Positions 57,283-64,000 of a stretch of 64,000 nucleotides of DNA are shown piece after piece. The notes below the pieces were generated by a model that saw only the letters and a list, made by a program, of their open reading frames with translations, was not told the origin of the DNA and ran no database searches. The first letter of the stretch is position 1, and every line of letters begins with the position of its first letter. Origin of the DNA: Dimorphilus gyrociliatus (taxonomy: Eukaryota > Animalia > Annelida); NCBI GenBank assembly GCA_904063045.1, contig CAJFCJ010000009.1, positions 228,942 through 292,941 of the forward strand, in the 5' to 3' direction. The position numbers were made by a program, and so were the translations under genes.

Positions 57283-58058
57283 ATGATTAGATCAATATTC
57301 AAACGTCAGGTGATAGAATTGATATATAACTATTTCCTATATTCGTTCTATAATAAGATAAACGATAAGTTTTTGTATCTTTTTTATAGATATTTAATAG
57401 ACTAAGTGTAGTTTCGCCTAGGCTCTTTTCTCGATATCCGATTCCCCAGCGTTCGACGTTAGATGATGACATTCAACAGCAAATGAACGAAGTAGAACAA
57501 AAAGTGATCCATCAGATTGTTAATGTCCACAATAAAACCGCTAATTGATAAATTTTATAGACAGGATTTTTGCCGAATGTTTTTAAAGCGTTTTCTCATC
57601 GTCCTAAGGAGTATAGAGCGTTCTTTGCCTATTACGATGCTGTTATGAACGATCCAAATTCAAAACTTACTAATGATGAAAAAGAGTTAATTATTGTTGC
57701 TACCAGCTCATTAAATCATTGCTTATATTGTATAGTTGCCCATGGAGCTGTACACAGAATATATTCCAAACGACCTTTTGTAGCTGATCAAGTGGCTATA
57801 AATTACAAAAGTGCAGATATAACTGAAAGGGAAAAGATAATACTAGACTTTGCTATGGCTGTTGCGTCCGGTAAGCCTCTTGAACACAATCAATTTGAGG
57901 AATTGGAGAAGATAGGATTCGATAAAGAAGATGCATGGGATATTGGTTCAATAGCATCATTTTTTGCATTGTCAAATAGAATGGCTCATTTATTAGATAT
58001 GAAACCGAATGATGAATTTTTTACAATGGGAAGAATTCCAAAAAATAAATCTACTTGA
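57283..58058 (+). CDS. AhpD/carboxymuconolactone-decarboxylase-family peroxidase-related protein with a mitochondrial-type presequence
   Basis: Exons 57283-57309, 57390-57503, 57561-58058. SRYPIP..TGFLPNVF..HRPKEYRAFFAYYDA, ELIIVATS..HCLYCIVAHG, FFALSNRMA, PNDEFFTMGR. Confidence 0.9.
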
Positions 58059-58416: not shown

Positions 58417-60829
58417 CTATTGATTTGAAGATCGTATTCCTAGAGCTTGTTCCAATTCAGCTCTTTTTTGTTGTATCTATTAAAATGAAAATTAGTTAAA
58501 TATTCAATTATTTAAACAGTAATATAATGTTACCTTATTATAAAAATAGCGACAAACGGCTTCTTGTGACCATGGTTGATAATAAAATTCAGCTCTTCTC
58601 TCTTCTTCCGGATTTCCAACCGTATCGGTTATTACTTTCAAATCTTTCGTTTGACTTATTAGCCAATTATTTATGGATTCTTGCGGATCTTTACTAAATC
58701 CAAGAAGGAACTCCCGACTGGTCTATAAGAATAAAAGGAAATCGATATTAAATCAAATATACTCATGCATATTGTCTTTATTATATTTCTTTTATCTTTA
58801 CCTTTAATTGATTAATAGTTTCAACAGTTTCATGTATTTTATTATCCAATTGAGCTAAATCATTTTGGCTCGTCGTTGATAAAAGAAAGTTGTTCATTTG
58901 AGATTTAATTGAGTCATCCTGCGGGAAAGGAACAATAGGAATAAATTACTAAATCAAAATTTAAAATATATAAACGGATGATATATTCTACCAACCACTT
59001 CAACTTCTATGTCATAACATGAAGTTTTCTTAGTTTCTTGTCCTTCAACAGTTATCAAATGGGATATAACAATCGGATCAGGTGGGGAAAGCAACGAATG
59101 GAGCCTTTGGGGTACTTCGGCAAATTTCATCCTACTAACTTCAAAGCAATGTTTCAATGAATCATCTAAATTGATATATTCCCTTTCGTGCTCGTCTTGA
59201 AGTCTATGAGTTTTTATATATTGCCACAGATGTTCTATAATGACTGGGCGGCTATTTGTGTGAACACCCAAAACCCTTGCCAGACGAGAGTCAAGTTTAA
59301 ATTGAGGAGGTTGATAATCAAGCATCAACAAAACCATACACTTTACATTCTGATCACCTGGTCTCTTAACTTGGAATCCATCGGTTTCCTGAGTAGTTGG
59401 CGTACGATGCCACTCAACAAGATGATTATCGGGTCCATACAATTCTTTATCTAGTTCTATTACAAGAGATTTGAAAAATGAAGAAAACTTTCTCTTCGGT
59501 GCCTTAGCTGCCTCCGCACTCGGCTCATCAATAAGTTTTCCTTCAACTCGTAATTCCCAGGATGCTGGCGCATCTTGTCCGTTATTAAGCTCAGCAGGCT
59601 TGGCGGGCGTGAATGTGTTTGATATATAAATTCTTAGTTTCCTTTTTACTTTGTGAGGCCGTTTCAAAGCTTCTTGAATATCTAAACGTTTACGCATAAT
59701 CGTCGCGTCTAACTTTCTTTCAAAAGCCAATAGCTCCATATAAGCGTTCGATTCAGGAACAAGTTCTCTAATTTTCTCTGGAATAACTTTATCAGCAATT
59801 TTCCTCTTTTTCTTTCTATTAAACAAAATATTCAAAGAAATATAGTTCAATTATCTTTTGAAACAAATTATAAAACAAACTGTTTAATCCTAGAATCTTG
59901 AGACGGAGCTGAGGTTCCTCTCCGTAAGCTGTGTTGCTGTTGCTGTTGCATTGCGCTCGGGGTTGCGGTTGGTGGACGACTGAGAGCTGTACAAAAAAAA
60001 ACAAGGTTATTTTCGCACAATATACGTCAATAATCGATGTAACTAATCAAAATAGGCCTATTGTTCTCAGCGGATACAGTTCCTCAATCCAGAGGCTAAT
60101 ACCTTGTAATCCTTCTGATTCACGCAACCAGCTTCCTGACAAATAAAATTGACGCCCTAATCCATGATTAATCGCACTATGCTGATTTCACTTTGCTCTT
60201 TTTTATACATTATATACGGTATGTTTTAAAAATCTTAAATAACTTTTTAAACTTATAGAAAAATAAAAATTACGAATCGAAAAAGATAACAGACTTTTAT
60301 CTTTACCTGCACCATAGTTCATAGACATTGATCTGCCAGGCATAACTTGTCCAGGTCCAGACATAAAATTACCAGACATAGGCCTCTGTTGCATTCCATA
60401 ATTTCCAGTCTGTAATTAGAATTTAAATACAATTCATTATTATATGTTCCTTATAAATTGTAAAAAAAAAGTTAAAATAGCAATTATAAGCGAGAATAGT
60501 AATAGAATGAATTTTTCATTTCGTAGCGGTATTTCGAAAATAATAGGATAATTATTAGAAACAAAAAAAAATTAATAGAAAGATTAATGATAAATTTGTC
60601 GCATAATTGATCAAATTAAAGATAGAAGTTAGCATTAAATGACTTTTTTGGTAGCTTAATGGATAACGAATACCAATATATTAGATTTCTATTGGATTAG
60701 AATTTTTGGTTATTATATATAGCTTTCGAAATATTAGATTCTATTGGAAAAAAAAAACAAATATCTTACTTGATATCCAGGCTGAGGGTATGGTCGTAAT
60801 TGATTTTGAGGGAAATTATTCGCCGCCAT
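58417..60829 (-). CDS. SMARCD1: SWI/SNF (BAF) complex 60-kDa subunit
   Basis: [34 protein letters not shown] domain, [29 protein letters not shown]; co-ortholog of SMARCD1/2/3. Confidence 0.96.
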
Positions 60830-62410
60830 TGAATTCTTTAAAACTGTGAAAAAAAAACTATCATTTTCTATCAAGAATCAATTTCTTTGAATATTCTTTG
60901 TGAAGTTAGTAAAAATGTAACAATTAGTTTCAACTTGAATTTAATAAGTAAACTGGAGTGAATGTAGTAAGCTCAAGGGAAAATATTAATAGGAGTGATT
61001 ATCGTTTCTTCATTTTATGCTATGTATAAATTTTTCTAAATAAGGAAGCCGTCTCTAAATTATAAAATACCAAGATTAAATTGCATTAGTAAAAATTTTT
61101 AGATACAAGAAAATATTTGATAGACATGTTACGTACGCTTTTTAGTACTCATGAATAAATTCCAAAGAAAGTCTGTTTTACAGCTATAATTCCAAATAAA
61201 AGCTCAAGATGTTTATTATCTGATCGTCGTGAGCCACTACACAACTTTTAAAAAAGCTAAAGTTGTCAAGGACAACTACATCAACTACGACTGGCTGGAT
61301 TTTAGTTCTTTATCGTTCACTCAATATATATTTAGCAGATTAATCTTAAAAATCAATGCATTTTTTAAAAAAAAAGCACAATTATAGATTAAAATTTAAA
61401 AATAATAATATACATTTTCAGGAATGATCTTGTATGCGTATTAACTCTATAAATATCTTACTTTGTTTCATCTACACCGAAATATTGGCGATGGCGGCCA
61501 AGAAAAAACACCAGTTTATTGTCTAGACTGGTTGTGTAAGCGGAAAAATATCATATCAGCTTTGATCAGGAAAGCTTTTTCTGTCCAAAGAATATATCAT
61601 TCTACAATTTATAAAAAGTTTTGAACAGATTTGAATAATAAACATTTAATTTATCATTATGGAAAAAAATTAGTCCTTTTTAAACAACCGCTGTATACCT
61701 CTAGTAATCCAATTCGCTTTCTTATCATACATGTGATAACTTATATCTATATTATAAAACATATATCTATTAAATGTACATGTGTTAAATATATTAAATT
61801 AATCACAGTCTATTCTTATTTTAAAATTCCCATTTAGACCTATATTTCTTAACATATAAATTAGAAATATCTTGAAAGATAATGAACTAATATTCTTGAA
61901 TAATTATTTGTGATATAATATATTTAAAAAATATAACCTCTAAATAATTGTAACAGAAAGATCAAAGCAGCTTTTAAAAGCCGGTCAGGGCAATTTACAT
62001 TTTACGTAAACTAACCATCATTATACCAAACTTATTGTACTATAAAAAATGCTTCCGCAAATCTACTCACAAAATAGGCCAAATATAGTAAATCTCTCAC
62101 TCAAAAATAGCTTTTTTTAGATGCGATCTCTTGAAAAACCAACTAAAATTTTTAATTTGTTGGACGCTTTCGTAAGTTCTTCAAATATCGTTCGCTGTCG
62201 AATCGATTCCAGTATGGACACTGTAAGATTATGCGTTAGTTGCAATTTATTTGAAATGAACTTTTCTCTCTTCGAAGTTTTTTATTTTCACACAAAGAAA
62301 TCATACTTTTGGAATAAGTAAAGGATAAAAAGATTTTTACATATACTATTATATTGTTTGTGGCTGTAAAATTATGATTTTATAATAAGAAAGTAGTTAA
62401 AAGATGTAAT

Positions 62411-62490
62411 CGCCATTTTGAAAGTATTACTTTCGTATTTTTTCTGCTCTCATAGCATTTGAGCTTCCGGGCACCACTGGGCTCTTCCGA
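62411..62490 (+). promoter_or_regulatory. Putative housekeeping/TCT-type promoter of the snoRNA host gene
   Basis: YY1-like CGCCATTTT (62411), ETS-like CTTCCGG (62464), pyrimidine initiator-like CTCTTCC (62482). Confidence 0.4.
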
Positions 62491-62737
62491 TATTCGTTCT
62501 CATGTCAGAACTTTTATCTGCTTATATCTCTGTCAAAATTAAAGAAGGAAAAGCAATTTCAACATTGTTAAAATGAAGAAACAGAAAAGTTTGTGGTTTC
62601 TGAATTTAGACTACTTTCGAAGATAGTTAGAACCACGTGGCTGAAACTCGCGAAAAAAATTTCTTGTTATAGAAATATTCAACGACTGGGAAAAGTAAGA
62701 AAAGCAAAATTTCTTTTTTAAAGTATTGTAATATTTT

Positions 62738-62795
62738 ATGATGAATTTACCTTCACTCGCCGTGATGATTTTAATGAAATCAATGTAGGTACTGA
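62738..62795 (+). ncRNA. Box C/D snoRNA, copy 1
   Basis: C box ATGATGA at 62738; guide CTTCACTCGCCGT; D'-like ATGA; C'-like ATGAAA; D box CTGA at 62792, 72 nt before the 3' splice site. Confidence 0.85.
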
Positions 62796-62952
62796 ACTTC
62801 TTCAGTTTCTAAGATTGTTAGTTCAAAATAAAATGACAAGAGTTATCAAATGTACATTTCTTTACAGATTAAAGATGATGGGTTGAAGAGGCAATGGAAA
62901 CTCAGTTTGGTTAGGTAGGTGTTCGCTTGCATTTAAATTTGTTAAAAATACC

Positions 62953-63010
62953 ATGATGAATTTACCTTCACTCGCCGTGATGATTTTAATGAAATCACTG
63001 TTGGTACTGA
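62953..63010 (+). ncRNA. Box C/D snoRNA, copy 2
   Basis: Same boxes and guide; D box 67 nt upstream of the acceptor at 63077. Confidence 0.85.
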
Positions 63011-63167
63011 TTAATCTCCAACTTAGTTTAATATGAATTGAAATAGTCATCCCTCTAAAATTTCTTAATTTTTACAGAACAAAGACGACTTCTTCAAAAA
63101 AAAGAATTATATCTTCTGAAACTCTCAAAGTAAGTGCTTGTTGCCTTAATCTTTCGTTTTCATTTTT

Positions 63168-63225
63168 ATGATGAATTTACCTTCACTCGCCGTGATGATT
63201 TTAATGAAATCAATGTAGGTACTGA
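63168..63225 (+). ncRNA. Box C/D snoRNA, copy 3
   Basis: Identical to copy 1; D box 72 nt upstream of the acceptor at 63297. Confidence 0.85.
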
Positions 63226-63371
63226 ACTTCTTCAGTTTCTAAGATTTCTAGTTAAAGATAAAATTGCAAGAGTTATCAAATGTACATTTCTTTACAGATT
63301 AAAGATGTTGGCTTGAACACTCAGCTTCGTTAGGTAGGTGTTCGCTTGCATTTAAATTTGTAAAAATTACT

Positions 63372-63429
63372 ATGATGAATTTACCTTCACTCGCCGTGAT
63401 GATTTTAATGAAATCACTGTTGGTACTGA
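63372..63429 (+). ncRNA. Box C/D snoRNA, copy 4
   Basis: Identical to copy 2; D box 69 nt upstream of the acceptor at 63498. Confidence 0.85.
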
Positions 63430-63585
63430 TAAATCTCCAACCTAATTTAATAAGCAATGAAGTAGACTTCCTTCTTAAATTCTTAAAATTTTTTACAGAA
63501 TAAGGACGACTATTTAAAAAAAAAAATTTCATCTACTCTTATCCTCGATGTAAGTGCTTGTGTCTTTCTTTTTATTTTTATTTTT

Positions 63586-63643
63586 ATGATGAATTTACCT
63601 TCACTCGCCGTGATGATTCTCATGAAATCACTGTTGGTACTGA
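63586..63643 (+). ncRNA. Box C/D snoRNA, copy 5
   Basis: Like copy 2 with 2 substitutions in the D'-C' spacer; D box 64 nt upstream of the acceptor at 63707. Confidence 0.85.
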
Positions 63644-63865
63644 TTTACTTATTATTAGGCAGTAATTTATTTTAAAACGAACAAACAATAATATATCTTT
63701 AATACAGATCGGCATGGACGGCAGAATGATTCTGAATAACTCGAATTTGAATCATAAAGAATTAAATTCGATTGGATTTAAAAGCTACTGAAAAAAATAT
63801 AGAAAAAACGAAAACAAATTAAAGAGTTTATACAATCATTAAAATTAATAAAATTCTTCAACAAG

Positions 63866-64000
63866 TTAACTTAAGTTTTCTGTCATGAAAGTTTTCTCGT
63901 TAAAATTTACTATTTTTTCGTCGGTCTTTTCCTCTTTTTCTTCTTCGCCCTCGCTACTGTTATTACTTTCACTATCACTACCGCTAGTGTCTTCGTCACT
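63866..64000 (-). CDS. 3' end of an unidentified protein with a Ser/Asp/Glu-rich C-terminus (partial)
   Basis: Open frame from the window edge: SDEDTSGSDSESNNSSEGEEEKEEKTDEKIVNFNEKTFMTENLS*. Confidence 0.6.
   Translation of the reverse strand, partial: SDEDTSGSDSESNNSSEGEEEKEEKTDEKIVNFNEKTFMTENLS

What the first reader, a model, noticed from the sequence alone, without database searches (positions are those of the whole stretch)
62482..63855. Hidden non-coding host gene releasing five tandem box C/D snoRNAs
Seen: a 58-nt unit ATGATGA-ATTTAC-CTTCACTCGCCGT-G-ATGA-TTTTA-ATGAAA-TCA(C/A)TGT(T/A)GGTA-CTGA occurs five times (62738, 62953, 63168, 63372, 63586; spacing 215/215/204/214). Each copy lies in its own GT-AG intron with the D box 64-72 nt from the 3' splice site. 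The units are almost invariant while flanking intron and exon sequence diverges with indels (exons of 47 vs 36 nt and 52 vs 51 nt). A YY1/ETS/pyrimidine-initiator-like region lies upstream and AATAAA downstream. The longest spliced frame I found stops at 63331-63333, upstream of two further junctions (NMD-like). Established: this is the architecture of GAS5/UHG-type hosts, including the about 70-nt D-box-to-acceptor spacing. Inference: an unannotated snoRNA host that expanded by duplicating a two-intron, about 420-bp module. The ORF track shows only shadow ORFs here.
Basis: partly seen in the sequence, partly recalled or inferred. Interest (0 to 1): 0.9.

Follow-up and report, generated by a model that had tools for sequence, protein, structure and literature searches.

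The report
Five-copy snoRNA host gene in an annelid
A short, spliced, apparently non-coding gene of the miniature annelid Dimorphilus gyrociliatus carries the same 58-nt box C/D snoRNA-like unit in each of its five introns; this layout is well known from flies and mammals, but the unit's predicted target in 28S rRNA matches no catalogued snoRNA family.

Summary
Five 58-nt units sit at 62738, 62953, 63168, 63372 and 63586 (+). Each has a perfect C box (AUGAUGA), a perfect D box (CUGA) and weaker internal D'/C' boxes.

The D box lies 64-72 nt from the acceptor. Internal exons are 47, 52, 36 and 51 nt.

Units are 54-58/58 identical. Flanks of non-sister introns are only 36-50% identical. The spliced RNA has no ATG ORF longer than 25 aa downstream of the proposed start site.

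The window comes from Dimorphilus gyrociliatus, where the median intron is 66 bp; these introns are 158-173 nt.

An invariant 13-nt guide is perfectly antisense to ACGGCGAGUGAAG near the 5' end of 28S/25S rRNA. No Rfam family reaches its threshold; the best match is SNORD18-like at 22 bits.

Not shown: a stable small RNA, the methylation, the start site, or the worm's own 28S sequence.

Verdict: a real UHG/GAS5-type snoRNA host gene, a new member of a known kind. The scan noted this same stretch three more times, and not on other DNA.

The parts
62411..62489 (+).
   Evidence: Motifs read directly. Function and start site were not tested. The X1 contig extends further upstream, to 62071.
62482..62694 (+). 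Host exon 1. The 5' end is uncertain and lies somewhere between 62071 and 62482.
   Evidence: The X1 contig is continuous over 62071-62694, with donor GT at 62695. The part 62071-62154 is also a minus-strand 5' exon of the SMARCD1-like gene.
62695..62867 (+). Intron 1 (173 nt, GT..AG).
   Evidence: Joint 62694|62868 in X1.
62738..62795 (+). snoRNA-like unit, copy 1 (variant A, guide 2 = UCAAUGUAGGUA).
   Evidence: weak SNORD18-like hit of 22 bits.
62868..62914 (+). Host exon 2 (47 nt).
   Evidence: joint listed with cut +2.
62915..63077 (+). Intron 2 (163 nt).
   Evidence: Joint 62912|63076, cut +2, GT..AG.
62953..63010 (+). snoRNA-like unit, copy 2 (variant B, guide 2 = UCACUGUUGGUA).
63078..63129 (+). 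Host exon 3 (52 nt).
63130..63297 (+). Intron 3 (168 nt).
   Evidence: Joint 63129|63298, GT..AG.
63168..63225 (+). snoRNA-like unit, copy 3 (variant A, identical to copy 1).
63298..63333 (+). Host exon 4 (36 nt).
63334..63498 (+). Intron 4 (165 nt).
   Evidence: Joint 63331|63497, cut +2, GT..AG.
63372..63429 (+). snoRNA-like unit, copy 4 (variant B, identical to copy 2).
63499..63549 (+). Host exon 5 (51 nt).
   Evidence: Deduced from contig coordinates 1221-1273 of X1 record 6.
63550..63707 (+). Intron 5 (158 nt, GTAAGT..ACAG).
   Evidence: Implied by the record coordinates, which leave no room for unlisted letters. Splice sites read.
63586..63643 (+). snoRNA-like unit, copy 5 (variant B, with two changes in the D'-C' linker).
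63708..63865 (+). Last host exon, with AATAAA at 63847-63852. The 3' end is approximate. It overlaps the 3' end of a convergent minus-strand gene whose stop codon is at 63866-63868.

Best explanation
This is a dedicated snoRNA host gene of the UHG/GAS5 type in the annelid Dimorphilus gyrociliatus. RNA polymerase II transcribes a short + strand gene that lies head-to-head with the SMARCD1/BAF60-like gene. Its six small exons carry no conserved reading frame.

Each of its five introns holds one copy of a minimal, 58-nt box C/D snoRNA. The boxes are C = AUGAUGA, D' = AUGA or GUGA, C' about AUGAAA, and D = CUGA.

Inferred mechanism: the snoRNP proteins (Snu13, Nop58, Nop56, fibrillarin) assemble on the unit during splicing, which is why the D box is kept 64-72 nt upstream of the acceptor. 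After debranching, exonucleases trim the lariat down to the protected snoRNA. The spliced host RNA is a by-product.

The invariant 13-nt guide upstream of D' pairs with ACGGCGAGUGAAG in domain I of 28S rRNA, roughly 90-100 nt from its 5' end. By the fifth-nucleotide rule it would direct 2'-O-methylation of the second G of ACGG if D' is AUGA. It would direct methylation of the A of GCGAG if D' is GUGA.

The gene grew by tandem duplication of a two-intron module of about 420 bp, which multiplies the dose of one snoRNA.

Shown: the repeats, the splicing, the spacing, the lack of coding capacity, the selective conservation of the unit, and the complementarity to the conserved LSU motif. Inferred: release of a stable small RNA, snoRNP assembly, the methylation and its exact site, and the start site.
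For: Splicing: all five GT..AG introns on + are used in a transcriptome contig of depth 173, and no contigs lie inside the introns.

Placement: one unit per intron, with D-box-to-acceptor distance 64-72 nt. The introns are 158-173 nt in a genome whose median intron is 66 bp (PMC7854359).

Conservation: the unit has 54 invariant columns out of 58 across five copies, while flanks drop to 36-50% identity. Within the duplicated module, both unit pairs (116 nt) are unchanged against about 76% identity for the rest.

Boxes: perfect C and D boxes, with all five copies weakly SNORD18-like in Rfam.

No coding capacity.

Guide: the 13-mer is present in 28S/26S genes of limpets, yeasts and an oomycete, and its antisense is the standard nematode 28S-anchored ITS primer. 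The guide-target duplex is -25.1 kcal/mol, against -9.7 +/- 2.7 for 5000 shuffled guides, none of which reaches it.
Against: No small-RNA data were available, so a stable RNA of about 60 nt has not been seen.

No canonical terminal stem flanks the C and D boxes in any copy; possible external stems are weak and not shared between copies.

The internal D' and C' boxes are degenerate, and D' can be read in two registers.

No Rfam family reaches its threshold. No homologue from another species was found, so there is no cross-species conservation.

Identity of the two sister pairs of units could owe something to recent duplication or gene conversion.
Confidence: 0.8

Rival explanations
1. The RNA is a real box C/D snoRNP but works mainly as a folding chaperone or clamp on the 5' part of 28S rRNA rather than as a methylation guide. 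Vertebrate U8 and yeast snR190 work this way. It might use both guides on neighbouring sites.
For: The guide targets a universally conserved stretch that, to my knowledge, is not methylated in yeast or human. D' is non-canonical, so methylation competence is uncertain. Five copies suggest that a high dose is needed. On a generic LSU sequence, guide 2 (variant B) can pair imperfectly with AACUAACAAGGAUU, which lies 9 nt upstream of the guide-1 site.
Against: Guide-2 pairing on a generic LSU sequence is no better than shuffled controls (fraction of shuffles at or below the observed energy 0.11-0.31). Guide 2 exists in two versions that differ at two positions, including the fifth nucleotide from the D box, so at most one version fits any one site. 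The 13-bp guide-1 duplex placed next to a NUGA box is exactly the geometry of a methylation guide.
Confidence: 0.12
2. The units are orphan or decaying snoRNA copies, or they target another RNA. On this view the 28S match is incidental and the uniformity of the copies reflects recent duplication and gene conversion rather than function.
For: There is no cross-species conservation and no small-RNA evidence. Sister introns are 70-81% identical, so the duplications are not ancient. There is no terminal stem.
Against: Non-sister introns have essentially unalignable flanks (36-50% identity) but units 54-56/58 identical. The host is well expressed and cleanly spliced. A perfect 13-mer match to rRNA placed directly beside a D'-like box is unlikely by chance.
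Confidence: 0.06
3. The conserved unit is not an RNA product. It would be an intronic cis-element, such as a splicing or transcriptional element, of a lncRNA or short-peptide gene.
For: Only the host transcript has been observed. Short ATG ORFs of 24-25 aa exist.
Against: The unit carries the full C / D' / C' / D box order at snoRNA-like spacing and the canonical distance from the acceptor. The short ORFs have no family match, and the duplicated exons are not frame-conserved.
Confidence: 0.02

Closest known systems
Non-coding snoRNA host genes: mammalian UHG (SNHG1) and GAS5, and Drosophila Uhg1-Uhg8
   Same: A spliced, poorly conserved non-coding RNA with one box C/D snoRNA per intron and small exons, here with a possible pyrimidine-rich start. 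In Drosophila, 42% of intronic C/D snoRNAs lie in lncRNA hosts named Uhg (PMC11014333). The D box sits about 70 nt from the acceptor, as in vertebrate intronic C/D snoRNAs (established knowledge, Hirose and Steitz 2001).
   Different: Those hosts mostly carry different snoRNAs in successive introns; this one carries five copies of a single snoRNA. No sequence similarity to them is expected or seen. TOP-type initiation and NMD sensitivity were not tested here.
Tandem single-family snoRNA arrays in non-coding hosts: SNORD115/SNORD116 in SNHG14, and SNORD113/SNORD114 in MEG8
   Same: Repeated exon-intron modules, each intron holding a copy of the same C/D snoRNA. The snoRNA is conserved far better than the exons.
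   Different: The mammalian arrays have tens of copies, are imprinted and brain-specific, and are orphans without rRNA targets. This locus has five copies and a clear rRNA complementarity.
SNORD18 / U18 (Rfam RF00093)
   Same: Best Rfam match for all five copies. It has similar length and box order, and shares short strings (CUUCA, CCGUG) in the D' guide region.
   Different: Scores are 18-22 bits against a gathering score of 41, with E-values 0.36-4. The U18 guide targets a different 28S site (GAAACACGGACCA, A1313 in human 28S by my recollection). Not a member.
U8 snoRNA and yeast snR190: C/D snoRNAs that bind LSU rRNA as chaperones
   Same: A C/D snoRNA with complementarity to the 5' part (domain I) of LSU rRNA at a place not known to be methylated.
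   Different: No sequence or size similarity; U8 is about 135 nt and the Rfam U8 match here scores 16 bits. Here the guide sits in the standard methylation register.

Membership tests
Box C/D snoRNA | C box RUGAUGA near the 5' end and D box CUGA near the 3' end | tested here: met
   AUGAUGA and CUGA are invariant in all five copies.
Box C/D snoRNA | Internal D' and C' boxes in the order C - guide - D' - C' - guide - D | tested here: inconclusive
   D' reads AUGA (or GUGA three nt upstream), and C' reads about AUGAAA, matching 4 of 7 consensus positions. The order and spacing (20 / 5 / 12 nt) fit, but the boxes are degenerate.
Box C/D snoRNA | Short terminal stem that brings the C and D boxes together | tested here: not met
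   No complementary bases flank the boxes in any copy. Best flank duplexes are -1.9 to -7.1 kcal/mol and are not shared between copies. Many intronic animal snoRNAs also lack such a stem, so this is not disqualifying.
Box C/D snoRNA | Guide of at least 10 nt, complementary to rRNA or snRNA, ending 1-2 nt before D or D' | tested here: met
   A perfect 13-nt complement to ACGGCGAGUGAAG of LSU rRNA from other eukaryotes, ending 1 nt before AUGA. The worm's own 28S was not available.
Box C/D snoRNA | Accumulates as a stable 60-300 nt RNA bound by fibrillarin, Nop56, Nop58 and Snu13 | not testable with these tools
   Only assembled contigs of what appears to be a long-RNA library were available, and they contain no small RNAs.
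Box C/D snoRNA | Match to a curated Rfam family | tested here: not met
   No hit at gathering thresholds in the whole window. The best hit is SNORD18 at 22 bits against a threshold of 41.
Non-coding snoRNA host gene (UHG/GAS5 type) | Spliced Pol II transcript with the snoRNAs in its introns, one per intron | tested here: met
   Five GT..AG introns are used in the X1 contig, one unit in each.
Non-coding snoRNA host gene (UHG/GAS5 type) | No conserved or long open reading frame in the spliced RNA | tested here: met
   The longest ATG ORF is 25 aa downstream of 62482. A 66-aa ORF in the uncertain upstream part has no significant Pfam match. Duplicated exons differ by frame-shifting indels.
Non-coding snoRNA host gene (UHG/GAS5 type) | 5' terminal oligopyrimidine start site | tested here: inconclusive
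   CTCTTCC is present at 62482, but the contig extends to 62071 and merges with an antisense exon, so the start site is unknown.
Non-coding snoRNA host gene (UHG/GAS5 type) | Host RNA unstable (NMD target) relative to its snoRNAs | not testable with these tools
   This needs NMD inhibition or RNA half-life data.

The most novel reading that the evidence does not exclude
A minimal, archaeal-sized (58 nt) animal C/D snoRNA, amplified to five copies, that acts on a universally conserved stretch of 28S domain I where yeast and human carry no 2'-O-methyl group. It would either install a lineage-specific Nm there or act as a two-site clamp or chaperone on the nascent 5' end of 28S. That would make it a new functional snoRNA family rather than a diverged copy of a known one.
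Probability: 0.15. Interest if true: 0.6.

Novelty: new member of a known kind. Interest (0 to 1): 0.35.

Why it matters
I found no paper in the searchable library that describes snoRNAs of this annelid, and the genome paper's main text never uses the term non-coding. This locus therefore adds a well-supported non-coding gene to a genome used as a model of compaction.

It shows that introns 2.5 times the median length are kept where they carry a snoRNA at the canonical distance from the acceptor.

It predicts a testable rRNA modification, or binding site, in a universally conserved part of 28S domain I that no Rfam family targets.

It does not change the understanding of how snoRNA host genes work.

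Tried and rejected
1. I first guessed the organism was a placozoan, from its GC content, a coral metatranscriptome hit and small assembly sizes, and I read the Trichoplax ncRNA paper. The guess was wrong. The neighbouring SMARCD1-like exon is 100% identical to DgyrCDS7199 of Dimorphilus gyrociliatus.

2. Rfam: nothing at gathering thresholds. With permissive E-values there are only weak SNORD18, sR11 and Z165 hits.

3. A pattern scan of JGI metagenome contigs for C box + guide + D' gave one hit, inside a 57% GC bacterial coding region. It is a chance match.

4. Synteny search: look-ups of the Owenia and Dimorphilus SMARCD1 proteins found no record. The next-best homologues are only about 75% identical, so no related locus could be fetched.

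5. Literature search for the guide as RNA or DNA found only 28S-anchored PCR primers and no snoRNA.

6. Test of the 'double-guide clamp' idea: on a generic LSU 5' stretch, guide 2 pairs no better than shuffled controls. Searches for exact complements of guide 2 returned only papers with no evident link to rRNA, judged from titles and abstracts.

7. Terminal or external stems: none are shared between the copies.

8. Tandem Repeats Finder found nothing, although the repeats are real.

Full report
**Observation.** The sequence and the repeat finder confirm five copies of a 58-nt unit on the + strand. They start at 62738, 62953, 63168, 63372 and 63586, with spacing 215/215/204/214.
- The unit reads C box AUGAUGA, a 20-nt spacer that contains the invariant CUUCACUCGCCGU, then AUGA, a 5-nt linker, AUGAAA, a 12-nt spacer and D box CUGA.
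- The 13-mer occurs exactly five times in the 64-kb window, all here. At up to 2 mismatches 0.28 matches are expected by chance, and no shuffle reaches the observed number.
- Copies 1 and 3 are identical to each other, as are copies 2 and 4. The two versions differ at two positions of the second spacer. Copy 5 has the second version plus two changes in the linker.
- Tandem Repeats Finder reported nothing, presumably because the sequence between the units is too diverged.

**Splicing is shown by independent data.** Laying public runs on 61001-64000 gave, in run X1, one 2030-nt contig at depth 172.7. X1 dates from 2017 and its contigs look like a transcriptome.
- The contig covers 62071-62694, 62868-62914, 63078-63129, 63298-63333, 63499-63549 and 63708-64000.
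- Four joints are listed with GT..AG ends on the + strand. The fifth intron (63550-63707, GTAAGT..ACAG) follows from the contig's own coordinates, which leave no unassigned letters.
- The binned depths in the intron regions are fully accounted for by the exon bases. X1 therefore holds no unspliced or genomic contigs here.
- Every intron contains exactly one unit. The C box begins 36-43 nt after the donor, and the D box ends 64-72 nt before the acceptor.

**Organism.** My first guess, a placozoan, was wrong. The large exon of the neighbouring minus-strand gene is 100% identical to DgyrCDS7199 of Dimorphilus gyrociliatus, a SMARCD1/BAF60 homologue. The next-best hits are about 75% identical. The genome paper gives a median intron of 66 bp for this 73.8-Mb genome, and its main text never uses the term non-coding (PMC7854359). 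The five host introns, at 158-173 nt, are about 2.5 times the median. That fits a payload plus a spacing requirement.

**Selective conservation.** In an alignment of the five introns, 54 of the 58 unit columns are invariant. Outside the unit only the splice sites and scattered bases are invariant.
- For non-sister introns, unit identity is 54-56/58 against 36-50% in the flanks (Fisher p 1e-9 to 1e-16).
- For the sister pairs it is 58/58 against 70% and 81%.
- The two-intron modules 62695-63129 and 63130-63549 are 82.6% identical with 29 gap columns, yet both unit pairs are unchanged.
- The duplicated exons differ by an 11-nt and a 1-nt indel, so no reading frame is preserved.

**Coding capacity.** From the proposed start at 62482, the longest ATG ORFs are 24 and 25 aa. 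A 66-aa ORF lies in the uncertain upstream part, at 62121-62321. None of the three ORFs tested has a significant Pfam match.

**What the unit is.** The box order, spacing, size and intronic position are those of a box C/D snoRNA. Rfam finds nothing at its thresholds. With permissive settings all five copies align end to end with SNORD18 at 18-22 bits, where the threshold is 41. The U18 guide is different, so this is not a U18 member. No canonical terminal stem exists, and the possible external stems are weak and not shared between copies. This is common among intronic animal snoRNAs that rely on splicing-coupled assembly, but it remains a weakness.

**Target.** The reverse complement of the invariant 13-mer is ACGGCGAGUGAAG.
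- This string is printed as 28S/26S sequence for keyhole limpets (TCCCTCAGTAACGGCGAGTGAAGCG, PMC5288781) and yeasts (PMC4076316).
- It also appears in an oomycete LSU stretch...GGAAAAGAAACTAACAAGGATTCCCCTAGTAACGGCGAGTGAAGCGGGA... (PMC10623814).
- Its antisense is part of a widely used 28S-anchored ITS primer for nematodes and flatworms.
- It is therefore a near-universal motif, about 90-100 nt from the LSU 5' end.
- The guide-target duplex is -25.1 kcal/mol, against -9.7 +/- 2.7 for 5000 shuffled guides, none as good.
- With D' = AUGA, the fifth-nucleotide rule points to the second G of ACGG. With D' = GUGA, it points to the A of GCGAG.
- From my own knowledge, neither residue is a known Nm site in yeast or human. 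I could not check other taxa, and I could not obtain the annelid's own 28S.

**Second guide.** The 12 nt before the D box come in two versions. On the generic LSU stretch they can pair imperfectly with AACUAACAAGGAUU, which lies 9 nt upstream of the first site. The energies are within the range of shuffled controls: the fraction of shuffles at or below the observed energy is 0.11 for variant B and 0.31 for variant A. The 'double-guide clamp' idea from another note on this stretch is therefore not supported, but it is not excluded until the worm's own rRNA is used.

**Ends of the gene.** Upstream motifs (GCCATTTT, CTTCCGG, CTCTTCCG at 62482) and AATAAA at 63847 are present.
- The X1 contig runs upstream to 62071. 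That point is the donor of a minus-strand 5' exon of the SMARCD1-like gene: several CT..AC joints and loose ends lead to the exon at about 60814-60843 that holds its ATG. The two genes are head-to-head and their transcripts overlap or abut, so the + strand start site is unresolved.
- At the 3' end, the contig continues 927 nt beyond the window. A convergent minus-strand gene has its stop codon at 63866-63868, so the two 3' ends overlap and the assembler merged them.

**Comparison with what is known.** The architecture is that of non-coding snoRNA hosts (UHG, GAS5, Drosophila Uhg genes; PMC11014333). In its repetition of one snoRNA it resembles the SNORD115/116 and SNORD113/114 arrays. It is a new member of that kind in a phylum where I found no snoRNA catalogue, with a guide that no Rfam family shares.

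**What led nowhere.** The metagenome pattern scan gave one chance hit in a bacterial gene. The synteny look-ups found no record.

**Verdict.** The unshown steps are release of the small RNA, the modification itself and the start site. The same stretch was noted three more times by the scan, and not on other DNA.

Noticed in passing
window 60814-62154, minus strand: The SMARCD1/BAF60-like gene (DgyrCDS7199) uses several alternative non-coding 5' exons. CT..AC joints lie at 61344|61414, 61344|61462, 61601|61699, 61601|61938 and 61746|62071. Loose ends at 61137, 61462 and 62071 all lead to the ATG-bearing exon at about 60814-60843. The most distal exon (62071-62154 or beyond) abuts or overlaps the 5' end of the snoRNA host, making a head-to-head pair.
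   Followed up: partly
window 63708-64000: A convergent minus-strand gene with an acidic Ser/Glu-rich C-terminus ends at stop codon 63866-63868. The X1 contig joins it to the host's last exon and runs 927 nt past the window end, so the two 3' ends overlap.
   Followed up: partly
window 57570-58058 (+): A single-exon ORF encodes a CMD/AhpD-like 'peroxidase-related enzyme'. Its nearest ESM Atlas clusters are all bacterial. It could be an old eukaryotic CMD gene or a transfer.
   Followed up: no
window 63454-63508 in run X7: The 2024 DNA run X7 shows only G>A differences (8 of 8 listed) on its contigs. That is the signature of a bisulfite or enzymatic-conversion library, not of sequence variation.
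   Followed up: no
window 62071-62154 in run X6: A coral metatranscriptome holds a contig at 99% or higher identity for the SMARCD1-like 5' exon joined to its coding exon. This worm, or a near-identical strain, therefore lives in that coral sample.
   Followed up: no
window 63550-63643: Intron 5 has the 5' flank of the A-type introns (like intron 3) but a unit with the B-type second guide. This points to gene conversion between copies, or to the B type being ancestral.
   Followed up: no
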